The notes: a model not told the origin generated them from the sequence alone. Shown: positions 1-60,072, counted from the stretch's first letter. The stretch: 64,000 bases of DNA from Ruditapes philippinarum (GCF_026571515.1 NW_026863680.1:62001-126000); one strand, 5' to 3'. Numbers and translations: made by a program.

Positions 1-518
1 TGCAAAAAATATTATTATATCATATCACGTATTTGGAAGTTGTACAGCCACCAATACTCTTTTGCAAATGAAATCTCTTTTTTTCGAATTTGTAGTTTTG
101 CGACCGTCGTGTATGAGTGCGAGAAATAGCGGAAAATTGTGACATTAGTAAAACATCAATTAACAAGATTATTACTGAAAACATGCCAATGACTAAAGAG
201 TGCGCTACATGGGTACCGAATCTGTTAACAGATAAGCAGATGAAAATAAGTATTCCAGCAGAAGGACGATTAGATACTTTGAGAAAGAGTGAACGTTAAC
301 GTCGTTATCTCCAAAACGTCGTTGTAACAAGGGCAGATGCGACGATGATTTATATTTATATAGTTTTATAATTTTGTACACAATGCATAGAATTAGATAC
401 ATTTGCGCATGATAGTAGAAATGTAGAAGGAAATTAAGCGGCTTGTTTCATTTTGAAATCTATCAACATTATTTTTCAAATTAAAAATCGTCCGTGTACT
501 TTACGGACGCACCTCTTA
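1..518 (+). mobile_element. Decayed mariner transposon fragment
   Basis: ORF 117-299 REIAENCDISKTSINKIITENMPMTKECATWVPNLLTDKQ matches the mariner HTH/WVPHxL linker; TIR-like CTTTACGGACGCACCTC near 500-516. Confidence 0.75.
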
Positions 519-29439: not shown

Positions 29440-29617
29440 CTATTGATCTTTTTGCCATGGTTTTTTATCAACTCCTTTATGTGCTGGTATGTGAGAATTC
29501 CGGCATTTATCACCATATGTACATCCGGTTGTTCTCCAAAAATAGCACTCATTTCCATTAACTGGTCCAGATTGTTTTTGGTTTCTCACAGCAGTCCCTA
29601 TTGTGATTGTCCCATTA
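29440..29617 (-). CDS. Terminal coding exon: CCCH zinc finger
   Basis: tttcag|T AAT GGG...SGPVNGNECYFWRTTGCTYGDKCRNSHIPAHKGVDKKPWQKDQ*; C-X7-C-X5-C-X3-H; phase matches the 41327 donor. Confidence 0.88.
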
Positions 29618-32600
29618 CTGAAATAAAACAAAAATATATACAAATTCTAATCATAAGCTTACACAAGATATTTATATAATAATTTTTATTCACAAAATAA
29701 TACTTCTGATTATATTCAGGTGAAATCTTCTCAAAATATGTTGAGTAGACAATTTTTGTGCTCATTTTAAACAACACATCATAAAGGTATTATTGCAGTA
29801 AGAATTACAGAAATGAAATGTGTCAATTTATTATGACAACTGGGTATAATGTGATTTAGTAGGACTAAAATTTTCCGATTATTAAAACCTTAAATTGAAA
29901 TCGTATTCTGCACCTGCCTCTTTCTGGTAAAATATAAAACTGTTTTCATGTCGAGGGATTCCAAAACTTTAATACTACTCCATATGAATAATTCAAAGAC
30001 AAAGAACTTGAATGAAAGGTTCCTTTAATTTAGCTTACAAAGTAAAATATACAATACTTCAAAGGGATAACTCACCAGAAAAAAAAAACAACATTATAAT
30101 ATTTAATGCTAATAAACAATGTAAAAGAATGTGTAAAACATCTTCATTAAACTAACTGTCCAAATTACTTAGTAATCGAGGCCTATACTACATACGTGAC
30201 TATGTGCAGTAGGGGAAAATATTTACAGAATTAGCAAATAGTGTTAAGAGACTGAAAAGAGAAGAATTTTGAAGAGAACTTTTTATTTAAATAAAAACTT
30301 ATACATACTAGATATCATCTAACTGCACTGACAATTTTTGAAAAATTAATTCTGTCAAGAAAAAATTGATTTATTTATAAAAGGGACTTTGTTGTGCACT
30401 GTCTATATGCTTCAAATAAATTTTCTCTGTTTGTGTTTTTTACTGTGGGTAAAACCACAAATTCAGCTGGTAATTATAACAGAATGCCTATAGGAGTAAG
30501 CTCCCTTGAATATCTTTATGGTAATTAAACAGAATGCCTTCAGTAGTAAGCTCCCTTAAATATCTATATGGTAATTAAACAGAATACCTACAGGAGTAAG
30601 CTCCCGTGAATAAATATAAAGTCCAGATAAAGACTACAGCAGCTATAAAATCAAGAACTTATAACAGTACACAAAAATACACCAAAAGCTTGCATCAAAC
30701 TTCTACTAGGCGAAGCTCAGCTACCAAAAGCCCCGACATAAATTGGGAAAAATAAAAGACTGAAGTGAACTGGGGTGTGAAAATGAACAGAAAATTATAA
30801 TAAAATGAACAACATTGATACAGGTTGTGCACATGGTATAAAAATGAAAATGACAGCATAATGGAAATCATATTAACCACTGTTTGCAAACCCAATTTTC
30901 TCTATGATATATGGGATTAGTCTCCTGATAGTACCAGCAACTTTTTTGGTGAGATGTCATAGAAGAGACGGTTACACTGCCACCTAAAGCAGCTAGGAAC
31001 AGTTAGACCAGTGTTTCAAAATCTGTACTTTATTTTCACCAAAAAAGCATTATTTCCCACAATATTTTATGTACACAGTTCTCCCCCAACATTTTTCATC
31101 CTTGGCATTTTTTTCACCATTATCTGAATCTATTTCCATTACATTACTCTTATTCATGGGGAAAGTGATATCAGAAGGGAAACATTTTCTTTTATTCATA
31201 CATATGAACAACTTCAGGTCAGAAACATATATATCAACCCAGCATATTTCTTTGTTTGGTTTTATGGTAGAAACCAGGTGGCACATACTAGATATTGGCA
31301 ATTTATTTTCACATCAATGTTTAAACATTGTACATCTTTTACTCTTTTATAGTGTCTATTCTAGGATGCAAAATTTGTCAGAAATTGGGATATTTTCTAT
31401 CTCACTCCTCAACACACACACAAACACAGGCATAGGAAAAAAAGAGATTTGTTTTACAAAAGGGCAGGCTTTATCATTTTATTATTTCAATTTGGTTAAA
31501 AGATTGTATCAAAGTTAATTAATTTTTAAAGAAATTTGTTTTATCATAAGTGCAGACAAATATGACAAATATCAATCAATATACCTATATCAACATATCA
31601 ATGCCAAAAATATAAGTAGTTAAATTGCATTTCTATTGGGTTTCTTTTGTTTCTTTAATATTGCATAGAATTTTCAGATCCAAAGATAAACACTTTTTTT
31701 ACAAGACCTTCGAAAAATTGCATAAATCATGAAATTCGCACCCTAGAATAGACACTTGATATACTTTGTACATGATTTTACAACAGCTCTCTCTCTCTCT
31801 TTTTATCTCTCTCTCTGCAAAACAATTTTGTAATTTCATAAAAATAATTAAATTCAAATGGTGAAAAATACGACAAGAAAGAAAAAAAGAAGGTAACATT
31901 TTATCATGCAGTATATACTTACATTCAGAATTTTCGTTTTCTACCAAAGTCAAAATGCCTAAGAATAGAAGTTTCCATAGTAACTGTTAAATTTATAGAA
32001 ATATACCGATATCTTTTCTAAAACATGAAACCGTGAACCATAATAAAAAAATCCCCTGTTACAAAAAAGGTTTCCAAATTTATGATTTACAAATGTATAT
32101 GAAAACAATCTGCAATGTCTCTAAAACAATGTCGCATTCATTTAATAATTATTATTCACTTATCTTAGTAACAAAAAAAAAACCTTTGTTCAGGGGGAAA
32201 AAACAAAACCAGGCTGAGCAACTGACCAACATTTTAACAGCATAATCTGCCTAAAACAAAACACATTGACAGGACAGTTGTAAGCACACACTAAAAATAA
32301 CTAGGAAAACAAGAACATGTTTGGTTAACACAAATGCCCCAGCCATGATTCTTGTGACAAACAAATTTTCAAAACAGGTCTACCCATTTAATCAATTTTG
32401 GACAGAAAAATTGCGAAAATAAAATGTTAACAGTTATGTAACTTGACAAAGTCATATCCTTTCGTGAAAAATATAAGTTGACATGTCATTGCTATTTGAT
32501 GAAGATGAAAAATACTCAACTTACCAATAAAATAAAGACTCCACCCAAACTTAGAGCCCCACCTGAGGAATGTTCCGTCTAAATATGAGGCATTGGTAAA

Positions 32601-38600: not shown

Positions 38601-41600
38601 GAAAATTCTTGACTTCTGGAAATAATGACTTCTTTGTGGGTTTTTTTTTCTCATCTACTGATCCTTACTTTGAACTTTTATTTGAATAACAGTAGATTTA
38701 ACCAGAAATATGTTATGGTGAAATTCTTATTGTAATTTACCAATTTGATAATTTAATTTATAAAGATAGGGATCTTCTAGGAATCAATGCACACTGGTCA
38801 ATTTCACCAATCATGACTTCATAGAAACATGCAATGTTAATTTGAAGAAATTTCTATTCTCTTTCCAGAATATAGATGAGGAAATAACAAGGAATTCAAA
38901 TAACACTGCATGTTGTATTTACGCTCATCTGTAAGTTAAAAACGGCATAACTAAAACAATATTGCTTTCAGAATAATGCCCCTTGTCTAACAACTGCACA
39001 TTTTCATGATAAACAAAATGTTGGTCATTTTTAATGCAATGCCATCTATAGCTTTTCCATTTATGTCAATTATTTATATTGTAAAATGTGTAAACACAAC
39101 CAAATAGGTAAGGATATCAGAATACCATTATACAGAACAAAACAATATGATTTTACATCTTATCAAGCTACACCTATACTATTAAACATTAAAATAACAT
39201 TATAGTATGATCTGGCTCAAAAAGAACAAAAACATTTTGTCACACCTTAAATTATAAGTATCAAATTACTACAAACTAGAAATGTGTCCATAGGACATGG
39301 GTGCCCCCACCGCGCCACTGTTCTGTCAATCTTTTTACTAAGTCAAGGGAAATAACTCTACAAATACTGGATAAATCCACAAGCCAAACCCCAGGTGCAA
39401 ATCTAAATATGCTGAGCAACCTGCCCATAAGGTTTAATGACTATGTCAAATCCTTTTTGAGTAACATGCGACACAAGTTGAAAATTGCAAAAATTTTCTA
39501 AGTGAAGGGCAATAACTCTAAAAATACTAAATAAATCCAGACCAAAATACCTGGTGCACAACTGCACATGCTGATCAATATTCCTGTAAAGTTACATGAC
39601 TCTAGGTCAAATACTTTTTGAGTTACATGCGACACAAGTTGAAAATTGCAAAATTTTACTAAGTCAAGGGCAATAATTCTGAAAATACTAAAAATATCCA
39701 GACGAAAATACCCAGGTGCACAACAACACATGCTGATCAACAATCCTGTAAAGTTTCATGACACTAGGTCAAATACTTTTTAAGTTACATGCGACACAAG
39801 TTGAAAATTGCAAAATTTTACTAAGTCAAGGGCAATAACTCTGAAAATACTAAAAATATGCAGACCAAAATGCCCAGGTGCACAACTACACATGCTGATC
39901 AACATTCCTGTAAAGTTTCATGACTCTAGGTCAAATACTTTTTGAGTTACGTGCGACACAAAAGTGAACGGACGGACGGACAAGGGTAAATCTAAATGCC
40001 CGCCACTAACGTGGGGGCACAAAAAGTATTTCATAGGTTTTAAGAAATCTGAATAAAGAAGCAATATTTAGTTCTAGCATCTAATATGCTGACTAATGTA
40101 GATGTATTGTCTGAAAGCACAAAACTAGGCATGTCCCAACAAATCTCTACTATAGGGGGATTGAATAAAGAAGTTTAAACCACAAAAGTTGCAAAATCTT
40201 TCAAGAACAACAACAATATAAAGCGAAATTTAAGATGTCTTCAAAAATCCAGCAAACAATTTTTGATGAATTCCGTTAACTGCAGACCTTTCAAATTTCC
40301 ATGTCCTATTCTTTCATTAGCGAATGATAATGATGTGCAGTTTATATGTTGATAGTGTAGAAACTTTTGTTTACAGAAGCAAGACAACAGTAACCTTACA
40401 TTCTGTGTTACAACAGGTTAAATGTGCTATATCATGTTTATATCATATCTGGTAAGTGACTGGTAATAGAGATAAGAAAACAACACCATGTGACAGGTCT
40501 TTTTAGATTGCTCAAAGGGGAAGATTTTCTGTATATTCTAAAACTTAACTTCTTTATAAAAACATCAGACAACTTACATTTACTTGTATGATAAAATCTC
40601 AACTTTCTATAACAAATTTATTTCACCCTGTTGTAACTCATTTTGTAAGTTTGAGTTATGTCCAACTTTCACTAAAACCCTTAATAAGATATGTAATAAA
40701 GTATGTAATCACTTAACATTTTAAATCACAACAATATTAAAAGTAACTTTTATCAACATTAACTTAAGACGTATATTTTTCAAAATAGTTCCTGGGAAAA
40801 CACATGCAAAATACACATGTATATAATACCAAAAATTGTCATTGTACTTTCTTCAAAGTTGTCTGCCTATTCATAGCAAGATAAGAAAGATTCAAACGTA
40901 AACGCAGCTTTTTTTTTTTGTTGGCCAAGTCATAATTTAAATAAAATTGTTCATGCAGAAATAAAACCTCTTTGAACATAACTTTGGAACATAACATCGC
41001 CCAATAAAAATTAGTCTTGAAAAACATGAAGAAAAAAAACACACACACTAAAAAGTAGTAACAAGAGAATGTTAGAAAGTCTGACACATTTAGCAATAAA
41101 ACAATTAAAGATGTTAATTATTGGACTTCACTTCACCAAAATACTGTTACTTCATAATGATAAAAAAATGAGCCCCATAGACTTGCTTATTATGATGTAG
41201 CCAAAACATACAGTATGCGTGAAAAAAGACTGCATTTATAACTGGTGAATTGTCTTACCATATATCATAAACAAACACACGCACACACACTCGGACAAGA
41301 CACAGATACAGTGAACATGTGCTCACCTTTTAGTTGTTGTTGTTGTATTACTTTGGTTTTTTCGTAAAGTTATAGTGCCATGATCATTTCCATTGGTAAT
41401 TGGGTGGTCTGGAAATTTTATCAATAATCTCTGACCACCACATTCTACACCCTGTAATATAAAAATATCAGAATATCCTGGGATACAATAACAAACACAT
41501 GTTTTAATTTTAAAACATATTTAAACATAACTCAATTTTGACATTAATTACATATGTTTATCATCAGGTGTCCCACAATGCATTGTTTCATGTAAAATCA

Positions 41601-44600: not shown

Positions 44601-47600
44601 TAAGAATCATAGTCACAATTTAAACAATCTTTTTATAACTTACCATTATTTGATGAGTTCGCACTCGTAAAAGTTCTTGAACAGCATCTTCACAATTTTT
44701 ATCTAATTTAAGCACTTGGGTAAAAGCTTGCTCTGCTTCTGGAAACATCTGAAAAAAATAAACAACCACCAGCTAGCAATTTCAAACTATAATTTTTTTA
44801 TTTAAAAGGTGAATGAGGAATGATTGTAAGCTGAACATTCTTACATATTGTCTGTGTTATATGAAAATGTTACAGGAGAGATAATAATGACTGAAATAGA
44901 AAAAATAGTCCATTAGTTCATATAAATATTCCTTCTCTTTTGATTATTTGTTTAGTATTGTACTATTAAAGGAAAGCCAGAAAAAAATATGTTTTTGTTT
45001 GCAACAAACATAATGAATGACTTTGCATTATCACATGTACAGAGCTTTTTCATTAGTAATAAAATTTGTTGGTTTCAAACTTTAAAACATTAAGAACTCA
45101 CTTTTAATCCAGCCAGAGCTCGGCCTTGTCTAAAATAGCCTTTCGGCCAATCTTTTGCTAATGATATTGCTTTTTCTGCATCTTTTAATGCCCTGAAAAA
45201 GAGTTAACATTTTAAAACCTAACTTCTTTCATCTAAATTTAAGTTCTATAAACATACATGCAATTGGCATTTAGTCTATACTGACGATTGGGAAATTTCT
45301 TATTTTTATATTGAAATCTCTTAAAACTCACAAAAAAAAGTTTTAAATTTAAAGCTGCAAAACAAGCACATTGTAAAACTTTATCTTAGCATTTTCAATC
45401 TAACATGTTTAAATTAAAAATACATCCATAAAACAAAGTTTCCAGTTGATTCCAGTGTTTTTGTCAGTCTACAGACTAACTGCATTAAAGGACAGACAGG
45501 TAAGAGTAAAGCTATATCACCCATTGTAAGTTATATCCATTATTATATAGTTTAAATGGTATATCATATTTTTTATATAAGATCCTTTATCAAATAACAG
45601 TACTTAATACATTTATATCATTTTTAATCAATATGGCATTGTAATTATATTCAAGTACATAGAGGTTATTCGTTTAGTTCAGTGTAAGATTGGGATATAT
45701 TTACCAAGTGAGCACCAAAAGGTATATTTCACGATGGGCGCATCCGCGAGTGAAACATGAACTTGTGGTGTTCACAAGGTGAAATATATTTAGATCTTAC
45801 AATACAAATTTTCTTTTTATTACATGCAAAGAAACTTTTTACAAGACATTTTAACCTAGTATTTAATGAAAGCTCGCCAAATAATAATACAATGTGACGT
45901 CATGTCATTAAGTTGGTTTCCAGTACTTTGCACGCTGGTATTTCACTGAAACAACGTAACAGGTTTAAATTCAAAACAGTGAAAAATATCAAACTGTTTC
46001 AAACAGTGAAATTATCAGTTTATATATCACTGATATATTTCTATAAACCTCCGAAAAGCATGAAATAAAATGTTTTACTTACTTTTCATATTGTTGTATT
46101 CTATCATAGCAGTAAGATCTATTACCAAAAAATCTGAAATTCAAACATTAAAATGTCATTAAAATTATAGTGATAAAAAAGATATTTTAAATCAGTCACA
46201 AGCTAACTGTAAACTAAACATATAACCCAAACTTTTAATTGATTTTCGCCAAGTGAAGGATATCATTACATAAATTATCTTATTAACATACTCATACTGA
46301 TTTTTACCAATCAGTAAAAATATTTGTGTTATACAGAGTGTAAAAACATGCCAACTGTTACAGTGACACTTTAAGCATGTCAATGAAAAAGCTTTTTTTT
46401 CTGTGGACAGTTGTTATTTTGGATATGTGATAAATAGAATATTATATTCGTGTAGCTTCATTACTAAATAAATCATGTTTGCCAATTTTTTTAATTCCAT
46501 TCTTTTATTCACTCAGATCATACAAACATGAGGCAATAATACAATTACATGTACATAATAAATGCCATGATAATGTCAGAGGCTTGCATAGTATAATTTT
46601 ATTCACACATTCAATACATTCAGTATTTAACTTACACTTACTCAATATACCAAGTCACATATCCTACATATCTAACCACCATGGGTACAATGCCTGTAAC
46701 TGTCTTATGCTCTAATTACAGAGTTGCTTATTAACTTCAGGATACTGTTTTCAAGATTGGAGCTTTTGGCCATATTTGATTGGATACATTATGATTTTTC
46801 AAAACTACTGTCTTGATTTATTGTATCATAGTTTAAGAAATTCTTTAGACATAGAAGCAGTAGAACCGAGAAGAAAATACACAACTATCAGGAAGTTTTT
46901 CAATTGTTCTGAATTACTCTCAGCTCAATAAATAAATTCTTCTTACCTTCTAAATAATGACTTTAAATGTATATTTTTAGACAGTCTTTATTTTAAAGCA
47001 ATAATTGGGGTTATCAATTACAAGGTTTATAAATCTGAATAACCTACCTAAAATCCTTAGGATCTAATTTTATAGCTTCGCTAAACAATTCTATTGCAGC
47101 ATTATAGTGACCTAAATGAGCCATCTCGTTGCCTTTTACTGAAAAAGTAAAAATGAACATATTTGAAGCAATAAATTTAAAATATCTCTGATTTTAATTA
47201 TTTTTACTTGTGAACATATATATGATAATTTGAATTTTTAATTACATTCAACTGTAACAGATTAATTAAGGCCCATTTACCCTAAAATAATGTACTCACT
47301 GTCAATATAGCTGTACCTGCTTTTGCTTATTTTGCTTTTAGGCAATTAGTGCAGTAAATCGGAAATTTGTATAGAAGGTAAAATACTGATTTGTTCACAT
47401 TTTGCAACCTTTTTTGACAGATTATTTCTCATTACTTCTAGTAATAAGCATCTAATATACTTTAATTATTAAAATATAACTAAAGACATGTCTGCCCCTT
47501 TTAAAAAAGTAAAATATTATTCATTGCCGAGGAATAATGTGCCTTTCAAATTCTTACAATCTGATTACAATTGGAATACACCTTTCTATGGGGTATACTC

Positions 47601-50600
47601 CCATATGTGCAAAATTCCAATATTTTTTTTCCACAAATACACATTACCTCTGCACAGAACATTTACAAAATGGAATATATATCATTGTATACTGAAGAAA
47701 CTTACTTGCAAGTTGTCTACTACGTAGAGTTTTTGGATCTAATTCTTCGGATTCTTCATCGCTTTTATCTCCCTTTTCTTTCCTCTGCCTTGAAGGCGGA
47801 GTTTCCACTGATAATGGAGATTTCTTCTTTTTGTTCACGACTTTGGTGAAAAATGCTGAATTTGGATCGAAGCCCTGAAATAATCACAAGTATGGTAATA
47901 ACAAAGTAACAGTACAACAGTCCTTGAGTCATTACAGCATGATCAAGCTCATACAACAACATTTCAACTTCAAGGTTTTCATTTTTATCTGAGGAAAAAT
48001 ATGTGCCAACAAAAACAATCAATTTGGGCAAGGGTCAAGGGGGATATTTTAATATACAGGCTGAAAATACAACTCAATGTGCTAAAATGTACTTACTGCT
48101 TCGTCCGAGGATGTTGATGCATCACCCCTGGAAAATAGATAATAATGATGTTGACATGCAAGACAATTTACATAACCAGAATATCAAATAACAAATAAAC
48201 AAGAGGAAACAATTAAATTAGACTGATGCCTTATTGGTAACTATATCAAGGAACCTAAACTTTATTTCTAAAATAACCCCTTGAAATGCAAAAAGCAATG
48301 CACTAATAATGTTATTTTTGGTGTATTTTATATGTGAAAAGAAAACATAGTAATATTGAAATGCAAGTCATATTTATCAAACTTGACACAAGGATCTGCC
48401 TTGTTATATGTTGTTTTAAGTTAATAGTTTAACTGTTTTCAGAGATATGAAATGTAAATTTTAAGACACCAAACAGATGGGGACATGATCAAATGATTTT
48501 TTTAGTTACTCAACTATTTAAGGTTTGAACAAGTATAGTTTTTTCAATATTTAATATAAACACTTACATCATATCTGTTTTTTTATTTTTCTCTGGAATA
48601 TTTTCAGAAATTTCTTTTACTTTTTGTTTTGATGATTTCTTTTCCTCCTACAATAACATTCAATAATTGATTAGTTTCTCTTGCACTCATCCACAATTGA
48701 AACAATAATTAAAGGTAACACTCAATTCTTAAAATCATAAACTCTACAAGAGTAAGAAAAAATGTATATAATTTTATAAAATATTGAATATTCAATATAA
48801 GAAGTATTCACTTTAGACATATTTTAGAAAACAGTTCTGATTTGTTCATAAAAAAAACAACAAAGTCATTCAGGATAAAAGAATACATGTGTCCATGCTG
48901 CCCCCACATTTCACTGTTTTGTCACACTATGAACAGCATGACAGTAAGATGAAAAGTATGGACAAGGGAGATATAATACTGCCATGAGAGGAAATGTAAA
49001 TACAGATATATACTTTAGACAATAACCACTAAGTGATACTTCAACTTATATTATAATGGTTAATAACAACTAGGACCAACACTTTAGAGAATGTCATTTT
49101 TTCTACTTTTACTATGATAAAACTGTGGTGTTAATACCTGAGGTTCAAAACTATCAGTGTCTGTTTTTTCTTGTTTCTTCTTTTCTCTTCTTCTCTGAAA
49201 AATATATATAAACATTACTAGAAATTCTTCTACAAAGGAGGCAAAGTTTAAATGTCTATTTTTTTTCTCTTACGTTCTGAAGTGAGTATAAACTTGTGCA
49301 TTCTTACAAAAAACAACCCAACTGTTACTGCCTATGCTGGAATTCACCGCACACTACATATTGACTGTCACTAAATATATTTAAGTATAGTAACAAATGA
49401 TATGATTTAATTCATTTAAATGTTAAGGAATAATACAACATATCCAAATCTAGCATATATCATATACTCGAGTATATATACAGAAAGAAATCAATTAAAT
49501 TGTCAACTTCAACACATAATAATATACATTTTTCTGGAATTCTATGAACAGGAAGGACATAACAGGTACAGACAGGATTATTGTTTTTATGTAGGTCATA
49601 GAATGTCATTTAGTTGTTCATTTTTTGTAATTAAGCAACAGCAAGACAACATTGTAATAATTATATAATAAACCTTTTTCTTTGCTCTTCTTTTTTCTGC
49701 TCTTCTCTTTTCTTTTTCTTCCTCAGTTATCAATTCTTCAGCATTACGACTGATTTCCTAAACATGATACAAAAATTTTTGTTAAGCTTAAGATTAAGCT
49801 GTAAAATACAATTCAACAAATTACAACCAATGTCTTCAAGTTATATAAGATGTGAAGAAGATAAGCTAAGGTATGGATGTACATAACCATAAAATCTTAA
49901 ATAAATGCACTTTTTAAAAGCAATATCATTTTTTCTTTATAACAAATGAAAACAAACTTGTTTTGTTTTAATTCTAACATCAAAACTTAAACCAAATTAT
50001 TAACTTGTCTAGCATACCACAAGAAAAATGTTAATTAATTTAGGAGTGAGTATGGTATATAATAGGCATATAAATCATATGATTGAGTACCAGGTTGATA
50101 GTTATAAAATTTATAAAAAAAGTTTCTGCTGCTCTTCCAGTTTTTACAAATCAGTTATGAGAAAAAAAAACAGTAACTTGTACAAACAAGTACAAAATCC
50201 AGAACCACTAGACAGGTCAGAACTGAAATGTCTTTATCTTGGTAAACCTAACAAAACTTATAAATCATCTCTACATAATTTATGATCAAGGTTATAGTAC
50301 CTCAGCTGATAATTTTTTGCCCATGATATCTCCCTCTTCCCGAGCTTTCTTCCAATCTTGTTTAAGTTTTATTTTGTCAGGAAATAGGTTAGAGTACTTC
50401 ACTTCTTCTTCAATATCCTCATCATCGTCATCATCATCCGAGGAGTCATACCCCGAACCATTGTAGGAATCTGTCAAACATATACATCATATCTTATAAA
50501 ACATATCTTTTCAAATCATATAAAGTAGTACTGGGGAAAAAAACAAAAGTGTTTAAATAGCCCTTCAAATACTTACCAGCCTGTTTTATTAGTATAAAGG

Positions 50601-53600: not shown

Positions 53601-56600
53601 GGGTAGGGCAAATTCAACACTAGGGGCATAATTAAAACAACTTTAGTACAGGACCCATAGATGATATTATATACCAAATATCAAAGCTCTAAGCCTTGTA
53701 CCTTCAGACAAGAAGATTTTTAATTTATTACTATATGTTCATAGTGAAAATCAATGACCCCTAGGGGTGGGGCCAATTTTGACCCTAGGACTATAATTTG
53801 TACAATCTTGCTAGAGGTTCACTACACAATGTTTCATGCAAAATATCTTAACTCTAGCCTTTGTCAATTTAGAGAAGATGATTTTTTAAGTTTTTACTAT
53901 ATACATATAAGGAAAACCTATGGCCCCCGGTGTGGGGCTAATTTTGACACTAGAGGCAAAATTTGAACAACTTTGGTAGAGTACCTATAGATGATATCAT
54001 TTAACAAATATTAAAGCTCTAAGCCTTGTACCTTCAGACAATAAGATTTTTTTTATATTTTACTATATGTAAATATTGAAAATCAATGACCAACGAAGCG
54101 GGGGCAATTTTGACCCCAGGGCTATAATCTGAACAATCTTGCTAGAGGTTCACTACACAATGTTTCATGCAAAATATCTTACCTCTAGCATTTGTCAATT
54201 ACTAGAAGATTTTTTTTAAAGTTTTTACTGTAAGTTTTTACTATATACATATAAGGAAAACCAATGACCCCCGGGTTGGGTCGATTTTGACCCCAGGGCT
54301 ATAATTTGAACAATCTTGGTAAAGGTCTACCAGACAATGCCTTATGCAAAATATCTAAGCTCTAGGCCTTTTGGGTCTTTTCAAGAAGATATTTTTAGTT
54401 TTTACTATATGTACATATTGCGAAAATCAATGCCCCCGGGCGGGGCCGATTTTGACCCCAGGGCTATAATTTGAACAATCTTGGTAAAGGTCTACCAGAC
54501 AATGCCTTATGCAAAATATCTAAGCTCTAGGCCTTTTGGGTCTTTATAAGAAGATATTTTTAGTTTTTACTATATGAACATATAGTGAAAATCAATGACC
54601 CCCGGGCGGGGCCGATTTTGACCCCAGGGCTATAATTTGAACAATCTTGGTAGAGGTCTACCAGACAATGCCTTATGCAAAATATCTAAGCTCTAGGCCT
54701 TTTGGGTCTTTACAAGAAGATTTTTTAAATTTATTCTTATAATTCCTTTTGGTTGCCATGGCAACCAGATTTCTGCATGGAATGAAATTCTTTGAACAAC
54801 TTTGGAAGCCCTTCACCCAAGGATCAATCCTGCCAAGTTTGGTTGAAATTGGACTAGTGGTTTTTCACAAGAAGATTTTTTAAGTTCACTATATAATCTA
54901 TATAACACACACACACACAAACAAACAAACAAACGCACACACACACACACACACACAGGTGAATCGCTATATGCCACCGCATCGCAGATGCTGCGGTGGC
55001 ATAAAAAGATTTGTTAACATAGAATATCACTTTTTTCTATTACTTACTGATTGGTCTGGTAAAGAAAACTTCTTTGAAAAGTGAAAGCATCTGGTCCTGA
55101 AACATATATTACATTTATTTTTATCAATAATTTTAGTTATTAATATGTCAGACAACATACCCTTTCTACACCCACATTAAGTACAATTATCAAATGCAAA
55201 CATCAATTACTAGCTATAACCAGACACTAGCACAAAACTATCAATATCTTTAAAAGGAAAATATTTCATCTCAGAAATTGTAAACTTTATCACAAGCCTT
55301 CTTTATAAAAAAGATGGGTTTACTATATAAACATGTTCCAAAATGCTAAATATATCTATTTCTCAAAGTGTTTTGGCAACTCTTATTTTCCCACATTTAC
55401 TTAATATATGACAATTCAAAAATGTACAAATTAGACAGACACAGATCAGTTCAGAAAAGGGACCAACGGAAAACCTCTCATGTAGGACAAGTTCATTGAA
55501 AAGCAGGGTTAAGTTCAACAAAGCCTCTGCCAATTGGGGTCATGCTCAAGTTTTTTCCCTTTTTCCATGGGATAAAGCATATTTCAGTGGGGGGAAAAAT
55601 CATTTACTCAAAGAAATTTCAGACTGATCTTGACCATGGCTCAAGTATTACTCATACATATAAGTGGGTTTGTCTATCAAATAACATTTATTGAAAATTC
55701 AACAATATGACCTTGATAGTCGAGATCATTTAAAGGTCAAATTCAATAAATTACCCAGATTGTCAAGGTTACATCAAGTTCAAGGTCATACATCAGTTAT
55801 CAAGGTATCAGTTCTGTTATAAGATTTGATTTGTCAACATATGAATCATCTTCATTGACAAATAAAACAACGTTAATAACTATAACTGAAACATTATATA
55901 CTTTAGGATAATTGTAAAATGATAAAGTCTTACTAGTGTCATGTCATCTGTACTTTCTCCTGTAGTCAATCTTTTGTAACTCTTACTGACAAGCTTAAAT
56001 TTCTGTAAAATATTCAAACATACATGTTTCATTAATAACTATGTATGGAACCACAATAACTTAACCTATTAAAACTTCTGCCTATATCTTACAAGGGCGT
56101 AGCGCCCATTACGCACAATACGCAATTGCGTATAAAAAAATTCGGAAGGTAAAAAAATAAAGTTGAGAAAATCTAAGTTTTAATGATTTTATCGCTATAA
56201 ATCTAGATCTCAATTTCTGTTTACAAAATATTCCGTTGCGTCATATCGTTTACTAGTGTAAACTATGATTGCGTCACTCTATCGTATGACGTTTCAATAT
56301 ATATGCAATAGGAATTTAAGTTTCTCGTTAACTCGAAGCATTTACAAACTTACTGCACAGAGATAAATGAAAAGATCAGCATTAATTTATCATAACAACT
56401 TATCGTTGGTTAAATTCTAAGAAAATAAAGATTATTAAGACTTTTCTTAAAGATTAAGACAAATCCTTTCTAAATCGTTTCCTTTGGAATAGCTCTATTT
56501 TAAAACGACTTTAAATCTTTTAAGTTCTAGATCCATCAACTCGGGACAAAATTTAATTTTTGGTGTGTTGTTAGTTGTAAAAATGAAAAGAAACATCCGT

Positions 56601-58787
56601 CAAATTCCAGGACAAGCGACCCTGTTTATGGTCCTAAAACAGGACCATATTCAAGTCGATAATGAATCTGACCAGGCAGAAACAAAACAGAATTCACAAG
56701 ACCTAGCATGTGAACCTCCTGTGATCAGCAAATCAGACGCCAATGTCGCGTCTCCTTCTCTCCTTTCTTCTTCTTCTCCGCCCACCTCCTCTTCTTCGTC
56801 ATGCCCTGCTTCATCTCCCCTCGAGAACCGCTAGAAGCTCCCTGGGAGCACGATTCCTGGATATCGGAAGTGTTGATATCAGAAGCCGACTAAGAATGCT
56901 AGATTCTAATAAAATGTTGTCCTCACCGAACGGTTCGAGCCAAATACAGGTTGGGTTGCACCTCTCAGAGAACTCAAAAAAGGGCAACAAGAACTTCTGA
57001 AGGCGAGTGCCGGACTGTGTGTTTGAGCAAGAGAAGCACCCATCTACTTAAAGTACATCCCTTTATTTAATGGGGGTATTTTGTGCTCCATGTTCTGCCT
57101 TTAATGCGTCTGAAAATGTGCTTGTTGCTTGTCCGTTGATTGACTGTAGCAACGCTAGAAAAGTCGTAGATGGGGACACACACACTCAAAAGAACACATG
57201 AATTCTATCACAAAAGCCGACCACTATGTACGCATCTGCAGGAAGGAAGAGCAGAATGTGGTCGAGTTCGGATCAACGGCCTATCGGCAGAAAGTACAAA
57301 AGATCGAGAGGCGTTAGCAGCCATCATTGAGGCCACATTTTTTGTGGGCAACAATATATATCTATGAGTAAGTCCGTTACTTTCTCATCACCGCCTGAGG
57401 AGACCTATGGGGTGATTTAATATCTCGTTGTATCTGGGAGTGGTATCTGGTAATTTCCCTACTTTCTTACGATGGAATAGAAGAGTTCTCGGAGTATAAT
57501 TTTTCTTGTGCATTTGGAAATAATTAATACATATACACTTGCAGTGATTTTTCTCGCTTAATTGGGAAGAAGCCTTAGCCTCTTGATTTGGGAAAAATTA
57601 TCGCTAAAATTGCTAATTTGGGAAGAAAAAAGCATGTTTCAGTTCAGATTTTAGGGAAAACTGCATGATTTTAAAGAAAATTTCAATTGGGAAGAGGCCC
57701 TTTTTCTGAGTCTGTTATATATGTAGGAAAAATCACTGACTTGGATAAATAAGACTGAAAAACCGTTCTTACCAAACTGATTTGATGAGAAATGCTAAAA
57801 AAAACTTGTTATCTGGTTAAATGCGTTTTACAATTGGACGGGCATTCATACATAAACCAAATTCATGATCTGCATCCTAATTCAAACTTCACATGGAAAA
57901 ATGTTTGTGTATGTTTATATGCACGTGTAAAATAAGAAAACAACATGGCGTACACTTCCTTTTATCTTCAAAAATCTGTTCGAAGTTATAATGAAATAAG
58001 TTAAAATGTAAAACGAGCAGCTATATGTTTATCAATTTATGGGGAAAAATGACTTGAGAAAGCTATATGCTTTACGTGCAAAAGTTGCTTCAAGACATGC
58101 CAGAGTCCAATATTTTACATCTAATTTTTCAAAATTTTCCGGGGGAGATCCCCCGTACCCCCACCAGCGGGAGGGGGACACCCCCTCCCGCACGCTCCCC
58201 CTCTCGGCACTTCGTGCCTCGCTTTGCGTATAATTTTTCAAGCCCTAGCTACGCCCCTGTCTTATCCCTTGTGCTCTAACAAGAAATATACAATATATAT
58301 GACAAACTTGTAATGATAATGTATTAACATTAAATTAACACTAGAAATAGCTTGTAAAACAATTCTTTGAATTCAGTTTAAGATATCTTCAGTCAGTTTA
58401 ATCTTACAAATGTATAAAGACTAAGTTATTCTAAATATTAATGAATTGTGTTAACAGATCAACATCCAAGGTGAATATCGTCTGGGAAATTATCCTTCAT
58501 TTTTTAAATTTTTTCCTCAAAAAAAAGAATAATTACTTCTGAATCATGATAATCATTAGTGTGTGACTTGTACTCACAAGAAGATTAACAACACATCTTT
58601 AAATGGTCCTGTTTTGTTTTGCTAAAAATACTACACTTTATCTTGTTTGTAAAGTTTTAAACAGAACATTGCAAGCTTTAAGATAAATAACTTACTGTGA
58701 GAGCATCTTGTGAACCACTGTGTTTATCTGGGTGCCATTTTAACGCCAGTCGTTTGTAACTTGTTCTTATAGAATCCTGGTCCACTC
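29440..58787 (-). CDS. TTC31: Spliced gene (5'-incomplete, 19 coding exons in window): DnaJ domain + 3 TPR + UBA + RRM + CCCH zinc finger protein, TTC31-like
   Basis: Exons in transcript order (all AG/GT, phases consistent): 58696-58787, 55934-56002, 55048-55096, 50301-50470, 49674-49757, 49138-49194, 48568-48647, 48097-48127, 47706-47874, 47048-47138, 46083-46133, 45102-45192, 44644-44748, 44071-44161, 43454-43559, 43015-43104, 42309-42411, 41327-41451, 29440-29617. Total 1832 nt, about 609 aa plus stop. Motifs: SYKRLALKWHPDK (J), NAEELITEEEKEKRRAEKRRAKKK (TTC31-like coiled coil), KGNEMAHLGHY / FFGNRSYCY / WPKGYFRQG (TPR), EMGFTRHQA (UBA), LWVGNV / KYCAFVNF (RRM), CYFWRTTGCTYGDKCRNSH (CCCH). 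Symbol assigned from recalled similarity only. Confidence 0.88.
30469..30612. repeat. Minisatellite, about 3 x 50-51 bp
   Basis: GGTAATTA(T)AACAGAATGCCTATAGGAGTAAGCTCCCTTGAATATC units at 30469, 30520, 30570. Confidence 0.9.
32308..33680 (+). mobile_element. Older HINE-like element with degenerate TGACCTTGACC repeats
   Basis: AACAAG...CACAAATGCCCC start; ACAGACAGAC; CTATATGCCCAGGGGCATAA end. Confidence 0.7.
34889..35810 (+). mobile_element. HINE-like element with ~145-bp TGACCTTGACCTTTGACC repeats
   Basis: AACAAG...ATGCCCCCC start; about 5 monomers; GACC/GGAC microsatellite; 3' hairpin CCCCCTCTTC-TTC-GAAGGGGGGCATAA. Confidence 0.85.
39274..40022 (+). mobile_element. HINE-like element with 4 x ~160-bp repeats
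   Basis: AACTAGAAATGTGTCC...GGACA start; CTAAGTCAAGGGCAATAACTC monomers at about 39338, 39498, 39659, 39821; GGACGGACGGAC; GCCCGCCAC...GTGGGGGCAC hairpin. Confidence 0.85.
41327..41451 (-). CDS. Exon: RRM end and linker
   Basis: GVECGGQRLLIKFPDHPITNGNDHGTITLRKNQSNTTTTTK. Confidence 0.9.
42309..42411 (-). CDS. Exon: RRM (RNP1)
   Basis: FGQVKSVRCLPEKYCAFVNFSTKEAAGKAMVGLQ. Confidence 0.92.
43015..43104 (-). CDS. Exon: RRM (RNP2)
   Basis: PKNPEGLTALWVGNVLPEVTDKKLHQMFA. Confidence 0.92.
43454..43559 (-). CDS. Exon: linker
   Basis: ENSLTSSQEVYVSDDEEFTAASQNSRTSGSDTKM. Confidence 0.85.
43742..43993 (-). mobile_element. Old V-domain SINE copy
   Basis: Reverse complement shows GCTATCCAGCTAGCTTATGGAACATAGATGGTTCTACTTAGGTGCCTG...GCCTGAAAT...AAAGCTGGAAAGTTGCCATATAACC. 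Confidence 0.78.
44071..44161 (-). CDS. Exon: UBA-like domain
   Basis: EMGFTRHQAEAAIKKYGTVQAALDSLLAGV (MGF motif). Confidence 0.9.
44644..44748 (-). CDS. Exon: TPR3 and capping helix
   Basis: MFPEAEQAFTQVLKLDKNCEDAVQELLRVRTHQIM. Confidence 0.92.
45102..45192 (-). CDS. Exon: TPR2-TPR3
   Basis: ALKDAEKAISLAKDWPKGYFRQGRALAGLK. Confidence 0.92.
45660..46070. mobile_element. Hairpin-centred non-autonomous element remnant (intronic)
   Basis: GTAAGAT...ATATATTT...TTTCACG...CGCGAGTGAAA...AAATATAT...ATCTTAC inverted arms, plus CAGTGAAA repeats. Confidence 0.5.
46083..46133 (-). CDS. Exon: TPR2 start
   Basis: FFGNRSYCYDRIQQYE. Confidence 0.9.
47048..47138 (-). CDS. Exon: TPR1
   Basis: KGNEMAHLGHYNAAIELFSEAIKLDPKDF. 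Confidence 0.92.
47706..47874 (-). CDS. Exon of TTC31-like gene
   Basis: GFDPNSAFFTKVVNKKKKSPLSVETPPSRQRKEKGDKSDEESEELDPKTLRSRQLA. Confidence 0.87.
48097..48127 (-). CDS. 31-nt micro-exon of TTC31-like gene
   Basis: ttttccag|G GGT GAT GCA TCA ACA TCC TCG GAC GAA GCA|gtaagt; needed to restore frame between the flanking exons. Confidence 0.78.
48568..48647 (-). CDS. Exon of TTC31-like gene
   Basis: EEKKSSKQKVKEISENIPEKNKKTDM, phase 0/2. Confidence 0.8.
49138..49194 (-). CDS. Exon of TTC31-like gene
   Basis: RRREKKKQEKTDTDSFEPQ, tttcag/gtatt. Confidence 0.82.
49674..49757 (-). CDS. Exon: TTC31-type charged coiled coil
   Basis: EISRNAEELITEEEKEKRRAEKRRAKKK. Confidence 0.88.
50301..50470 (-). 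CDS. Exon: acidic region
   Basis: SYNGSGYDSSDDDDDDEDIEEEVKYSNLFPDKIKLKQDWKKAREEGDIMGKKLSAE. Confidence 0.88.
50992..52393 (+). mobile_element. Same HINE-like family with 7 x ~166-bp internal repeats
   Basis: Same ends as 27491; GGGCCAATTTTGACCCCAGGGCTTTTATTTGAACAAACTTGGTAGAC monomers at about 51051, 51213, 51384, 51550, 51717, 51883, 52049; 3' hairpin collapsed to AAAGCTGAGCT. Confidence 0.88.
52592..55004 (+). mobile_element. HINE-like element with composite ~165-bp satellite array and (CA)n
   Basis: ATGCCACCGCAT near both ends; 3' hairpin ATGCCACCGCATC-GCA-GATGCTGCGGTGGCAT; (CA)n at 54905-54957. Confidence 0.85.
55048..55096 (-). CDS. Exon of TTC31-like gene
   Basis: DQMLSLFKEVFFTRPI, tttcag/gtaagt, phase 0/1. 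Confidence 0.82.
55934..56002 (-). CDS. Exon: J-domain helix III
   Basis: KFKLVSKSYKRLTTGESTDDMTL, ag/gtaag, phase 0/0. Confidence 0.88.
56092..58259 (+). mobile_element. Internally deleted hAT transposon (TTF zinc finger / DUF4371-type), 5-bp TSD
   Basis: TIRs CAAGGGCGTAGC / GCTACGCCCCTG (11/12); TCTTA on both flanks; transposase remnants MKRNIRQIPGQATLF, GVFCAPCSAF...KEHMNS, REALAAIIEAT. Confidence 0.82.
57542..57738. mobile_element. MITE nested in the hAT element
   Basis: TIR CAGTGATTTTTC / GAAAAATCACTG, internal TTGGGAA repeats, ACTTG on both flanks. Confidence 0.82.
58696..58787 (-). CDS. Exon: J-domain helix II and HPD motif
   Basis: cag|GA GTG GAC... translates GVDQDSIRTSYKRLALKWHPDKHSGSQDALT, then gtaagt. 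Confidence 0.92.
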
Positions 58788-59342
58788 CTGAATTACAAAA
58801 ACAATACTAATATATAATACAGTACAACACTTGCCTACCTGAGTAGTTTCAGCAAAAACAATCTTGTCAAGTAAAGACCATAATTATCACTGAATCATAA
58901 TGATTAAATATTGAATTAAAGCAACCAATGTCTATATAAGTAAATTACCAAGCATATTCATATGAACTGAATTCAAAACATTGTGAGATAAGATCTCAAA
59001 CCATCTAGTTAGAAGTAGGTTATCTCCTTCATGTTCAAAACATTGCAAAAAATGATGAAAAGTCTGTGACAAACACGAGTTTCATTCTACTTTTGTTGTA
59101 CTTTAGTCACAATCTAAAACAATTTAGGTCACAATGACATCATGATACCAAATTGAGACCCATTTGGGCTGGATTTCAGGACCAATTGACACCTTGGTTT
59201 AACCACCAAAATTCCTCACTTAAAGAATTTGATGTATCAAACATAAGCAGTAAGGTAAAAAACATGGATATAAGCCAATTTAATTATAACAATTGGAGGT
59301 ATGCTTAAAATCTCTCAATAAAGTTTTAAGTTATTAAAAATG

Positions 59343-59560
59343 CAGTGTAAGAAATTAGGATTTGAATCGACTAGGCTGGTCGGACTACCAGATTGGAATA
59401 TTCACTAGCCCAAAAGACAGTTCACTAGCACAATTCATTTGTTTACATTTGCCTCTGAAAATACAATACCCTGGTCGGGCTTGTTACAATGGAAAGTTGG
59501 TAGCCTGAGGAGAAATTTAGTAGTCAGGGGCTATAGGACTACTGCTAATTTCGAACACTG
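59343..59560 (+). mobile_element. hAT-type MITE, copy 1
   Basis: TIR CAGTGTAAGAAATTAG / CTAATTTCGAACACTG; AAAATG on both flanks. Confidence 0.82.
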
Positions 59561-60072
59561 AAAATGATGAAATTTTGGAATATTACTATGCCTTTTTTTC
59601 CCTTTAGAAATAGTTACTGTTTTCTCCTGAATCCAGTGTTAGTGACCAGTTTAATCCTATTGTGCCTATTACAAAATTTAATGATTTGAGTAATGCTAAA
59701 AGCACAAGCAAGTCATCCAACATCGGCCAACATTTTTTAAAATAAGTCAATCATGTATTCTGTTAAAAATAGTATCATTTATCACGCAACTTCTATGGCA
59801 AATGCTTGATAACACTTGTCTGATAATTATTTGTTATTAAGTTATTAACCTGATAACAAAAACAAGACCCATCAATTATAAGACTTAACACAAAGGTTCC
59901 CATTTTACTTTTATCAGGTGTTTCTTATATCACTGACTCTCATTTAGTCATTATCTAGTGATTGTCTTTAGAATTAAAATCAAAATGAAACTCATGTTTC
60001 AATTTAATTATGAATACATTAGATAGTGAACAAGCATCAACACAGCAGATATACGGAAATTTTCCAGCTTAA

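What the first reader, a model, noticed from the sequence alone, without database searches (positions are those of the whole stretch)
29440..58787. J-domain + clamp-type TPR + UBA + RRM + CCCH in one protein: candidate chaperone-ubiquitin-RNA quality-control adaptor
Seen: 19 phase-consistent exons give an intact HPD J-domain, three TPRs, a UBA (MGF), an RRM with both RNP motifs and a CCCH finger. Established: HPD stimulates Hsp70 ATPase. HOP/SGTA-type TPRs bind the Hsp70/90 EEVD tail through a K-N-N-K-R clamp; four of the five positions look retained here (KGN, GNR, WPKGYFR), with the first Lys replaced by Ala. UBA binds ubiquitin, and RRM and CCCH bind RNA. As I recall, mammalian TTC31 is an essentially uncharacterised coiled-coil/TPR protein without a J-domain. 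Inference: this may be the ancestral full-length TTC31, an unclassified class-C J-protein that recruits Hsp70 to ubiquitylated RNPs (ribosome quality control, stress-granule or RNP remodelling).
Basis: partly seen in the sequence, partly recalled or inferred. Interest (0 to 1): 0.8.

Follow-up and report, generated by a model that had tools for sequence, protein, structure and literature searches.

The report
Clam TTC31 ancestor carrying a J-domain
This is a real clam gene, already catalogued but unstudied, for an ancient animal protein that joins an Hsp70-activating J-domain to a TPR, a UBA-like fold, an RNA-binding RRM and a zinc finger; frogs and fish keep a J-less version called TTC31.

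Summary
Nineteen minus-strand exons (58787..29440), all with GT-AG junctions in consistent phase, reproduce residues 17-626 of RefSeq XP_060563590.1. That record is "uncharacterized protein LOC132722978 isoform X1" of Ruditapes philippinarum. Exon 1 (16 residues, start of the J-domain) lies off the contig.

Pfam on the RefSeq protein finds DnaJ with HPD, three TPRs and an RRM above threshold. A UBA-like fold and a C-x7-C-x5-C-x3-H finger score below threshold.

The architecture is not a gene-model artefact. It recurs in proteins from sponge, cnidarians, molluscs, annelids, echinoderms, hemichordates and amphioxus, including short transcript contigs.

Xenopus TTC31 and fish TTC31/zgc:123010 are collinear relatives without a detectable J-domain. 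"Ancestral full-length TTC31" is therefore supported as far as frog and fish.

Two cautions apply:
- The missing clamp lysine is Ala in 124 of 129 relatives. It sits at the position whose K30A change abolishes EEVD binding in CHIP.
- HPD is HPE, degenerate or lost in many lineages.

The Hsp70-ubiquitin-RNP function remains untested. No paper describing this architecture was found. I rate it a moderately interesting new variant of a known kind.

The parts
58696..58787 (-). Coding exon 2 (first in the window), residues 17-47: J-domain helix II, HPD (35-37), start of helix III
   Evidence: Pfam DnaJ 32.1 bits on this exon alone. Exact match to P0253. Acceptor AG and donor GTAAGT. The 4 differences from the haplotig are all synonymous.
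55934..56002 (-). Exon 3, residues 48-70: J-domain helix III (KFKLVSKSYKRL)
   Evidence: AlphaFold helix 43-61, pLDDT >90
55048..55096 (-). Exon 4, residues 71-87: conserved helix DQMLSLFKEVFF (helix IV-like)
   Evidence: helix 70-82 at high pLDDT; M..LF...FF conserved in the family consensus
50301..50470 (-). Exon 5, residues 87-143: acidic disordered tract
49674..49757 (-). Exon 6, residues 144-171: first part of the basic coiled-coil helix
   Evidence: helix 142-185
49138..49194 (-). Exon 7, residues 172-190: second part of the basic helix (RRREKKKQEK)
48568..48647 (-). Exon 8, residues 191-217: disordered linker
48097..48127 (-). Exon 9, residues 217-227: disordered linker
47706..47874 (-). 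Exon 10, residues 228-284: conserved DPNSAFF motif, linker, start of TPR helix A1 (SRQLA; A283 at the first clamp position)
47048..47138 (-). Exon 11, residues 284-314: TPR1 (KGN, N287)
   Evidence: Pfam TPR_2 27.5 bits on the exon
46083..46133 (-). Exon 12, residues 314-331: TPR2 helix A (FFGNRS, N318)
45102..45192 (-). Exon 13, residues 331-361: TPR2 helix B and TPR3 helix A (WPKGYFR; K348, R352)
44644..44748 (-). Exon 14, residues 362-396: TPR3 helix B and the capping helix, which runs on as helix 1 of the UBA-like fold
44071..44161 (-). Exon 15, residues 397-427: UBA-like helices 2-3 with the MGF loop
   Evidence: Weak UBA-family hits. UBA_7 or UBA at E<=0.01 in 26 and 23 of 77 relatives. 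G399 invariant.
43454..43559 (-). Exon 16, residues 427-462: acidic linker
43015..43104 (-). Exon 17, residues 462-492: RRM strand 1 (RNP2 LWVGNV) and helix 1
42309..42411 (-). Exon 18, residues 492-526: RRM RNP1 (KYCAFVNF)
   Evidence: RRM_1 21.6 bits on the exon
41327..41451 (-). Exon 19, residues 527-568: end of the RRM and a linker
29440..29617 (-). Exon 20 (last; isoform X1), residues 568-626 plus the TAG stop: GPVNGNECYFWRTTGC...H CCCH finger and KKPWQ tail
   Evidence: 318 library proteins at E<=0.001, most hits at the extreme C-terminus.
31925..31958 (-). Alternative last exon (RefSeq isoform X2, XP_060563592.1): R-HFDFGRKRKF-stop. It replaces the CCCH exon.
   Evidence: P0154 sequence; coordinates and acceptor; names

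Best explanation
What it is. The window holds coding exons 2-20 of Ruditapes philippinarum LOC132722978, about 29 kb on the minus strand. Exon 1 lies on the next contig. The 626-residue product is the clam member of the animal-wide TTC31 family in its full, ancestral form. From N to C it has:
- a J-domain with HPD
- an acidic tract and a basic coiled-coil with NLS-like runs
- a three-repeat TPR domain of the Hsp70/Hsp90-tail-binding fold
- a UBA-like three-helix bundle fused to the TPR capping helix
- a canonical RRM
- a C-terminal CCCH finger

Shown: the gene structure, the domains, conservation across animals, and kinship with the frog and fish proteins named TTC31.

How it most likely works (inferred). 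The RRM and CCCH tether the protein to RNA or RNPs. The J-domain then triggers ATP hydrolysis in Hsp70, so that Hsp70 clamps onto proteins in that RNP. The TPR domain provides a second contact with a chaperone tail or another acidic C-terminus, as in DNAJC7. The UBA-like fold either binds ubiquitin or simply buttresses the TPR. An alternative last exon yields an isoform without the zinc finger.
For: Gene model: exact mapping and unique GT-AG junctions; RefSeq isoforms X1 and X2 on this 126,543-base contig.

Single polypeptide:
- DnaJ together with TPR and RRM in 65 of 77 relatives.
- Full-length relatives encoded on 2.1-2.3 kb Logan contigs, too short to hold a 20-exon gene with its introns.
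- A complete transcriptome ORF, GHVO01067610.1.
- Sponge P0143 has the same layout.

Selection: 15 substitutions in 1034 nt of exons 2-13 between the two haplotype contigs change no residue, while the flanking introns are 87-92% identical.

Domains: Pfam. AlphaFold pLDDT is above 90 for J 1-82, TPR-UBA 274-433, RRM 465-540 and CCCH about 585-626. The TPR matches Sgt2, HOP, CHIP and PP5 peptide-binding domains at Z 20-22 and by sequence.

Conserved functional residues: N287, N318, K348, R352, MGF, RNP1, RNP2 and the CCCH ligands.

TTC31 link.

RNA-seq reads at about 1x lie on the bins holding exons 2, 5 and 6 (in run X21 mostly in one orientation), while several intron bins have none.
Against: No biochemical evidence exists for any step.
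- The first clamp lysine is Ala in 124/129 relatives. The same change in CHIP (K30A) abolishes binding of the Hsp70 C-terminal peptide (PMC4638040).
- The J-domain is not universally kept. HPE replaces HPD in gastropods, oysters, mussels and spiders; malacostracans have an HPD-less remnant; fish and cephalopods keep only the exon-1 stub.
- The conserved core of the family is therefore TPR-UBA-RRM-CCCH.
- UBA and CCCH score below Pfam cut-offs in this protein.
- The RNA-seq depth was too low to list a single splice joint for this gene. A J-to-CCCH mRNA has thus not been seen directly in this species.
Confidence: 0.55

Rival explanations
1. The conserved job is J-independent. The protein is chiefly an RNA-binding TPR adaptor, the function that Xenopus and fish TTC31 retain. 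The J-domain is an ancestral accessory that tunes this job or is on its way out.
For: TPR and RRM are found in 77/77 relatives and the CCCH ligands in all complete ones. DnaJ is found in 65/77. HPD changes to HPE in many lineages, malacostracans have a degenerate J-like stub (21.6 bits, below cut-off), and 0/120 fish proteins, the Xenopus isoform scanned and the octopus proteins have no detectable J.
Against: In this clam HPD is intact, and all four haplotype differences in the HPD exon are synonymous. Sponge, cnidarians, echinoderms, hemichordates and amphioxus keep HPD, which points to long-term selection on the J-domain.
Confidence: 0.3
2. The TPR domain does not bind EEVD tails. The invariant Ala at the first clamp position adapts the groove to a different ligand, so the only link to Hsp70 is through the J-domain.
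For: A283 is Ala in 124/129 relatives. It aligns with HOP K8. By the fold-search ranges, model 278..399 against chain 25..151, it corresponds to CHIP K30. K30A abolishes peptide binding. Xenopus TTC31 also lacks the KGN asparagine.
Against: The other four clamp residues are almost invariant (N287 119/129, N318 126, K348 127, R352 128). The closest structures are all chaperone-tail binders. A nearly invariant Arg280, one helical turn earlier, might replace the lysine; this is an inference.
Confidence: 0.35
3. It is a nuclear RNA-processing co-chaperone, in splicing or ribosome biogenesis and in the manner of DNAJC17, rather than a cytosolic ubiquitin-linked quality-control factor.
For: A basic KRRAKKKRRREKKK helix resembles a nuclear or nucleolar signal. 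RBM22 is among the solved RRM matches (E 3e-8), ranked after PABP, TIA-1 and TIAR. J + RRM is the DNAJC17 layout (my own knowledge).
Against: Localisation was not tested. The RRM also matches the cytoplasmic proteins PABP and TIA-1. The only published TTC31 phenotype is centrosome overduplication in human cells (PMC3817404).
Confidence: 0.2
4. The J-domain exons belong to a separate upstream gene and were fused by gene prediction.
For: An 8.2 kb gap separates exon 2 from exon 5. No splice joint was recovered from the reads.
Against: Exons 3 and 4 bridge the gap with unique in-phase junctions. On the haplotig the same interval is only about 2.6 kb. Dozens of species, including transcript contigs, encode the J-domain and the CCCH finger in one ORF.
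Confidence: 0.03

Closest known systems
TTC31 / zgc:123010 (vertebrate tetratricopeptide repeat protein 31)
   Same: Same family. The order is collinear: coiled-coil, three TPRs, UBA-like, RRM, C-terminal CCCH. Xenopus TTC31 aligns at E 3e-90 and 39% identity over 421 residues. Salmo zgc:123010 shares the C-terminal exon. Human TTC31 is described with a coiled-coil at 147-197 and TPRs at 305-406, the same relative positions (PMC7279152).
   Different: The frog and fish proteins examined have no detectable J-domain (0/120 fish); the fish sequences in the alignment keep only an exon-1-like stub. Human TTC31 is reported as disordered after the TPRs, so it apparently lacks the RRM and CCCH. Orthology to the mammalian protein was not tested here.
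DNAJC7 (TPR2), the known J-domain plus TPR co-chaperone
   Same: It combines a J-domain with TPR repeats of the chaperone-tail-binding type in one polypeptide, so Hsp70 can be engaged in two ways.
   Different: DNAJC7 has its J-domain at the C-terminus, has more TPRs, and has no RNA-binding modules (my own knowledge). Here the J-domain is N-terminal, with three TPRs, an RRM and a CCCH. It is a different family by architecture.
DNAJC17 (Cwf23), J-domain plus RRM
   Same: An N-terminal J-domain followed by an RRM. It is the precedent for a J-protein aimed at RNPs.
   Different: DNAJC17 is about 300 residues and has no TPR, UBA or CCCH (my own knowledge). Kinship of the J-domains was not tested.
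HOP/STIP1 TPR1 and TPR2B, CHIP, SGTA/Sgt2, PP5, RPAP3, SPAG1 TPR domains
   Same: Same fold of three TPRs plus a capping helix: Z 20-22, rmsd 0.9-1.9 Å over 115-131 residues. Sequence E-values reach 5e-17 to HOP TPR1. Four of the five clamp residues are present.
   Different: The first clamp lysine is Ala throughout the family. None of these proteins carries J, RRM or CCCH.
RBM22 / U2AF35-type CCCH plus RRM proteins
   Same: An RRM paired with a CCCH finger. RBM22's RRM is among the solved matches (E 3e-8).
   Different: In RBM22 the finger precedes the RRM (my own knowledge). Here it follows at the extreme C-terminus, after a disordered linker.

Membership tests
J-domain protein, class C | J-domain detectable above the curated threshold | tested here: met
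   PF00226 at 53.9 bits against a cut-off of 27.8, residues 8-62 of P0253; 32.1 bits on exon 2 alone.
J-domain protein, class C | His-Pro-Asp motif between helices II and III | tested here: met
   H35-P36-D37 in the window's exon 2. In the family the Asp is D in 63 and E in 43 sequences.
J-domain protein, class C | No G/F region, Cys-rich zinc domain or DnaJ_C (which would make it class A or B) | tested here: met
   No such Pfam family at E<=0.01. An acidic tract follows the J-domain.
J-domain protein, class C | Stimulates Hsp70 ATPase | not testable with these tools
   Needs a biochemical assay.
EEVD-binding (carboxylate-clamp) TPR co-chaperone domain | Fold of three TPRs plus a capping helix | tested here: met
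   AlphaFold helices 274-396, pLDDT 93-99. Z 20-22 to Sgt2, HOP, CHIP and PP5 peptide complexes.
EEVD-binding (carboxylate-clamp) TPR co-chaperone domain | All five clamp residues (HOP TPR1 K8, N12, N43, K73, R77) | tested here: not met
   Alignment to HOP TPR1: K8 is A283; N287, N318, K348 and R352 are present. Ala in 124/129 relatives. The equivalent K30A kills peptide binding in CHIP.
EEVD-binding (carboxylate-clamp) TPR co-chaperone domain | Binds Hsp70/Hsp90 C-terminal peptide | not testable with these tools
   Needs a binding assay.
UBA domain | Profile match above threshold | tested here: not met
   UBA_7 scores 16.3 bits against a cut-off of 27. Among 77 relatives, 26 match UBA_7 and 23 match UBA at E<=0.01, best 9e-5. 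One relative reaches 22.0 bits against 22.4.
UBA domain | Compact three-helix bundle with a conserved MGF/Y loop | tested here: inconclusive
   Helices 381-396, 402-412 and 415-433 at pLDDT >95. M398 117/129, G399 126/129, F400 119/129. No separate fold search of this small domain was possible.
RRM | Profile match plus RNP2 and RNP1 with aromatic residues | tested here: met
   RRM_1 at 47.1 bits against 20.7. LWVGNV with W473 127/129; KYCAFVNF with F509 126/129. A beta-alpha-beta-beta-alpha-beta pattern in the model.
CCCH zinc finger | C-x7/8-C-x5-C-x3-H ligand spacing | tested here: met
   C592-x7-C600-x5-C606-x3-H610. The ligands are conserved in 107-109 of 129 sequences; the rest are mostly gaps from truncated models. 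Pfam scores are below cut-off (18 against 29).
TTC31 family | Full-length collinear homology to a tetrapod protein named TTC31, and reciprocity | tested here: met
   Xenopus laevis TTC31 (XP_018080768.1) against P0253: 275 bits, E 3e-90. Its best match in this genome is the window's last exon, E 4.8e-12, with no second such locus.
TTC31 family | Orthology to mammalian TTC31 | not tested
   Only indirect support: database names, teleost-mammal synteny and phylogeny in PMC2446394, and the matching human domain layout in PMC7279152.
DNAJC7 | C-terminal J-domain behind multiple TPR clusters | tested here: not met
   Here the J-domain is N-terminal, and a single three-TPR domain is followed by an RRM and a CCCH.

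The most novel reading that the evidence does not exclude
Animals ancestrally had a dedicated RNA-tethered Hsp70 co-chaperone (J + TPR + UBA + RRM + CCCH). It survives intact from sponges to amphioxus. It lost its J-domain in vertebrates, cephalopods and pancrustaceans, and this sampling turned up no fly or nematode member, so it has gone unstudied. Under this reading human TTC31, known only for a centrosome-overduplication phenotype, would be a stripped remnant. Its biology would become approachable through the full-length invertebrate protein.
Probability: 0.3. Interest if true: 0.65.

Novelty: new variant of a known kind. Interest (0 to 1): 0.45.

Why it matters
J-domain proteins decide where Hsp70 acts, and only a few are aimed at RNA or RNPs. 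This family puts a J-domain, a chaperone-tail-type TPR, a ubiquitin-associated-like fold and two RNA-binding modules in one chain. It is conserved from sponges to amphioxus.

No paper describing it turned up in the library. The human relative, TTC31, lacks the J-domain, and no fly or nematode member appeared in the sampling.

The family offers three things:
- a natural series of J-domain states (HPD, HPE, degenerate, lost) on an otherwise constant scaffold;
- a naturally "K30A-like" TPR groove;
- an evolutionary handle on the barely characterised human TTC31.

The functional claims are inferences only.

Tried and rejected
- **G+C-richer ORFs at 56.6-57.0 kb as missing exons.** Rejected. The block 56091-58260 is an insertion absent from the haplotig, and the real exons 3 and 4 lie at 56002 and 55096.
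- **Exon 1 inside the window.** The best candidate, at 59438, has the wrong splice phase and reads into a stop. Nothing was found in the last 543 bases of the contig. Exon 1 is on C12102 and C5938.
- **Whole-genome DnaJ profile scan.** It found only exon 2 on this contig. Helix III is too divergent and too short for that scan.
- **Reads.** Depth on the gene was about 1x and no joint of the gene was listed. The list was filled by a highly expressed repeat.
- **Protein Atlas on an exon.** Stored homologues gave leads only.
- **Rfam on 55-62 kb:** nothing.
- **Papers:** 'zgc 123010' gave none. TTC31+DnaJ gave only gene lists. The five-domain query gave one unrelated paper. The large J-protein survey PMC10410713 does not mention RRM, UBA or CCCH architectures in its main text.
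- **Joined model.** Exons were searched singly, and whole-protein work used database records (P0253 and relatives).

Full report
**Where and what**

The window is G000:C12167:62001-126000, from a 126,543-base contig. Database names identify the organism as the Manila clam, Ruditapes philippinarum.

Scanned one exon at a time, they hit DnaJ (32.1 bits, profile positions 10-39), TPR, RRM and, weakly, UBA and CCCH families.

Exons were searched singly, and whole-protein analyses used database records that the tools returned.

**Finding the relatives**

The 58-residue last exon was searched against 1.84 billion representative proteins. It gave 318 hits at E<=0.001, mostly at the extreme C-terminus of proteins of 450-800 residues. 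Seven of the first ten long hits scanned carry DnaJ at residues about 8-65, followed by TPRs, an RRM and, in several, UBA and CCCH.

A word search with the relative P0003 returned 320 homologues. Among them are three RefSeq records from this clam:
- XP_060563590.1: isoform X1, 626 aa (P0253), on a contig of 126,543 bases.
- XP_060563592.1: isoform X2, 578 aa (P0154), on the same contig.
- XP_060563228.1: a truncated model, 396 aa, on the 591,189-base haplotig.

**Gene model**

P0253 residues 17-626 map at 100% identity onto 19 minus-strand exons between 58787 and 29443. Every one of the 18 junctions has exactly one GT..AG solution that reproduces the protein. The in-window exons sum to 1829 nt. 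With 49 nt of exon 1 this gives 1878 nt = 626 codons.

Exon 1 (MGLTREESYEILELPV, plus the first base of Gly17) is not in the window or in the remaining 543 bases of the contig. It lies in two other places:
- 7.6 kb upstream of exon 2 on haplotig C12102, with a GT donor in phase 1.
- On C5938, 1.8 kb from that contig's end. That is where the sequence beyond the end of C12167 would place it.

Isoform X2 uses an alternative last exon at 31958-31925 and lacks the zinc finger.

**Is the J-domain part of this gene?**

The haplotig is collinear with window 44.5-61.4 kb. There the distance from exon 2 to exon 5 is about 2.6 kb instead of 8.2 kb. The window carries a 2.2 kb insertion (56091-58260) and expanded 166-bp tandem arrays.

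Between the two haplotype contigs, exons 2-13 differ at 15 of 1034 positions without changing a residue. Four of these are in the HPD exon. The neighbouring introns are only 87-92% identical.

Full-length relatives with the J-domain and the CCCH finger in one ORF sit on Logan contigs of 2.1-2.3 kb. These contigs are too short to be unspliced genomic copies of a 20-exon gene. A complete transcriptome ORF (GHVO01067610.1) shows the same.

It gave only about 1x depth on the bins holding exons 2, 5 and 6 (in run X21 mostly in one orientation), while several intron bins had none. No joint of this gene was listed. Direct evidence for the mRNA in this species therefore remains thin. The cross-species evidence is strong.

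**Domains**

Pfam on P0253:
- DnaJ 8-62: 53.9 bits
- Three TPRs, 286-380
- RRM_1 472-535: 47.1 bits
- UBA_7: 16.3 bits, below cut-off
- zf_CCCH_4: 18 bits, below cut-off

AlphaFold with 103 relatives gives confident folds for:
- residues 1-82, a J-domain with an extra conserved helix, DQMLSLFKEVFF;
- a long basic helix, 142-185;
- residues 274-433, seven TPR-type helices running straight into a three-helix UBA-like bundle;
- residues 465-540, the RRM;
- residues about 585-626, the CCCH finger.

Disordered linkers lie between these folds.

The TPR domain matches Sgt2, HOP TPR1 and TPR2B, CHIP, PP5 and SPAG1 at Z 20-22, and by sequence down to E 5e-17.

**Conserved residues and two cautions**

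Across 129 family members:
- N287, N318, K348 and R352 (clamp positions 2-5) are nearly invariant.
- The MGF loop, RNP2 LWVGNV, RNP1 KYCAFVNF and the CCCH ligands are nearly invariant.

First caution. The first clamp position is Ala in 124 of 129 sequences. It aligns with HOP K8 and, by the fold-search ranges, with CHIP K30. CHIP K30A cannot bind the Hsp70 C-terminal peptide (PMC4638040). "Four of five retained" is accurate, but the missing residue is a critical one. A nearly invariant Arg280 one helical turn earlier might compensate; that is my inference.

Second caution. The HPD Asp is Glu in 43 sequences. By lineage:
- HPD is kept in sponge, cnidarians, echinoderms, hemichordates, amphioxus and some bivalves, including this clam.
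- HPE occurs in gastropods, oysters, mussels and spiders.
- Malacostracans carry an HPD-less remnant, 21.6 bits.
- The octopus and fish sequences retain only an exon-1-like stub, and no DnaJ is detected in the Xenopus TTC31 isoform scanned (444 aa).

**TTC31**

The last-exon search also retrieved Salmo trutta zgc:123010 and Xenopus laevis TTC31.
- Xenopus TTC31 aligns collinearly with P0253 residues 226-623 (E 3e-90).
- It has TPR, RRM and CCCH but no detectable J-domain.
- Its best locus in this genome is the window's last exon.
- None of 120 fish homologues has PF00226.

Published descriptions place a coiled-coil at 147-197 and TPRs at 305-406 in human TTC31, with a disordered tail after them (PMC7279152). 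They link teleost and mammalian Ttc31 by synteny and phylogeny (PMC2446394). The one functional study of human TTC31 reports centriole overduplication on knock-down (PMC3817404).

The mammalian step was not tested here.

**Novelty**

The gene is already modelled by RefSeq but unnamed. Its relatives carry automatic names such as nucleolin-like, STIP1-like or TTC31. No paper in the searchable library describes the architecture.

It combines known modules in a way related to DNAJC7 (J + TPR) and DNAJC17 (J + RRM), but it is a member of neither family. I rate it a new variant of a known kind and of moderate interest.

The proposed mechanism is an RNA-tethered J-protein that loads Hsp70 onto RNP components, with a TPR second contact and a possible ubiquitin link. 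It is inference from domain content, and the two cautions above temper it.

The Atlas could not read new sequences.

Noticed in passing
window 31925-31958 (minus strand): An alternative terminal exon (R-HFDFGRKRKF-stop) gives RefSeq isoform X2, which lacks the CCCH finger. The cell may therefore make the protein with and without its C-terminal finger.
   Followed up: partly
contig end beyond window 64000; L003 (C12102:22721-22769); L005 (C5938, about 19575-19625): The gene is split by a contig break. Exon 1 is absent from C12167. The C5938 copy, 1.8 kb from that contig's end, has two extra single bases in homopolymer runs just after the ATG, which put the ATG out of frame. This is probably an assembly error, but it could be a defective allele.
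   Followed up: partly
L001-L003 (C12102:1-30000) against window 44563-61419: This is an uncollapsed second haplotype of the same gene, with introns 87-96% identical. Its exon 14 has 5 gapped positions, which explains the scrambled tail of the truncated RefSeq model XP_060563228.1 ('stress-induced-phosphoprotein 1-like').
   Followed up: partly
window 51082-52175 and 53236-54702: Arrays of a tandem repeat of about 166 bp (73-90% matches) lie in the intron between exons 4 and 5. On the haplotig this 4.5 kb interval is only about 850 bp.
   Followed up: partly
window 56091-58260: A 2.2 kb insertion relative to the haplotig lies in the intron between exons 2 and 3. It is G+C-richer and has ORFs on both strands, including an acidic stretch. 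It is likely a mobile element and was not classified.
   Followed up: no
window about 60100-60640 (L002 6250-7065): An interspersed repeat of about 550 bp has at least 2,879 candidate copies at about 90% identity, sometimes in tandem at about 750-bp spacing. RNA-seq depth reaches thousands-fold in two runs, with many internal joints. There is no Rfam match.
   Followed up: partly
P0253 residues 229-236 (window exon 10) and 71-82 (exon 4): Two short motifs of unknown role are conserved across animals. One is DP.SAFF (D230, A234 and F235 in at least 90% of sequences; also in Xenopus TTC31 as DVNSAF). The other is the helix M..LF...FF just after the J-domain.
   Followed up: no
protein P0136 (Cottoperca gobio, CEACAM20-like): A fish immunoglobulin-domain protein model ends with a copy of the TTC31-type CCCH exon. 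This is probably a fused gene prediction.
   Followed up: no
Atlas lead: A basidiomycete cluster of 'C3H1-type domain-containing' proteins with TPR and zf-CCCH_4 came up near fish TTC31 (score 0.82). It is a possible non-animal relative of the TPR-CCCH core and remains a lead only.
   Followed up: no
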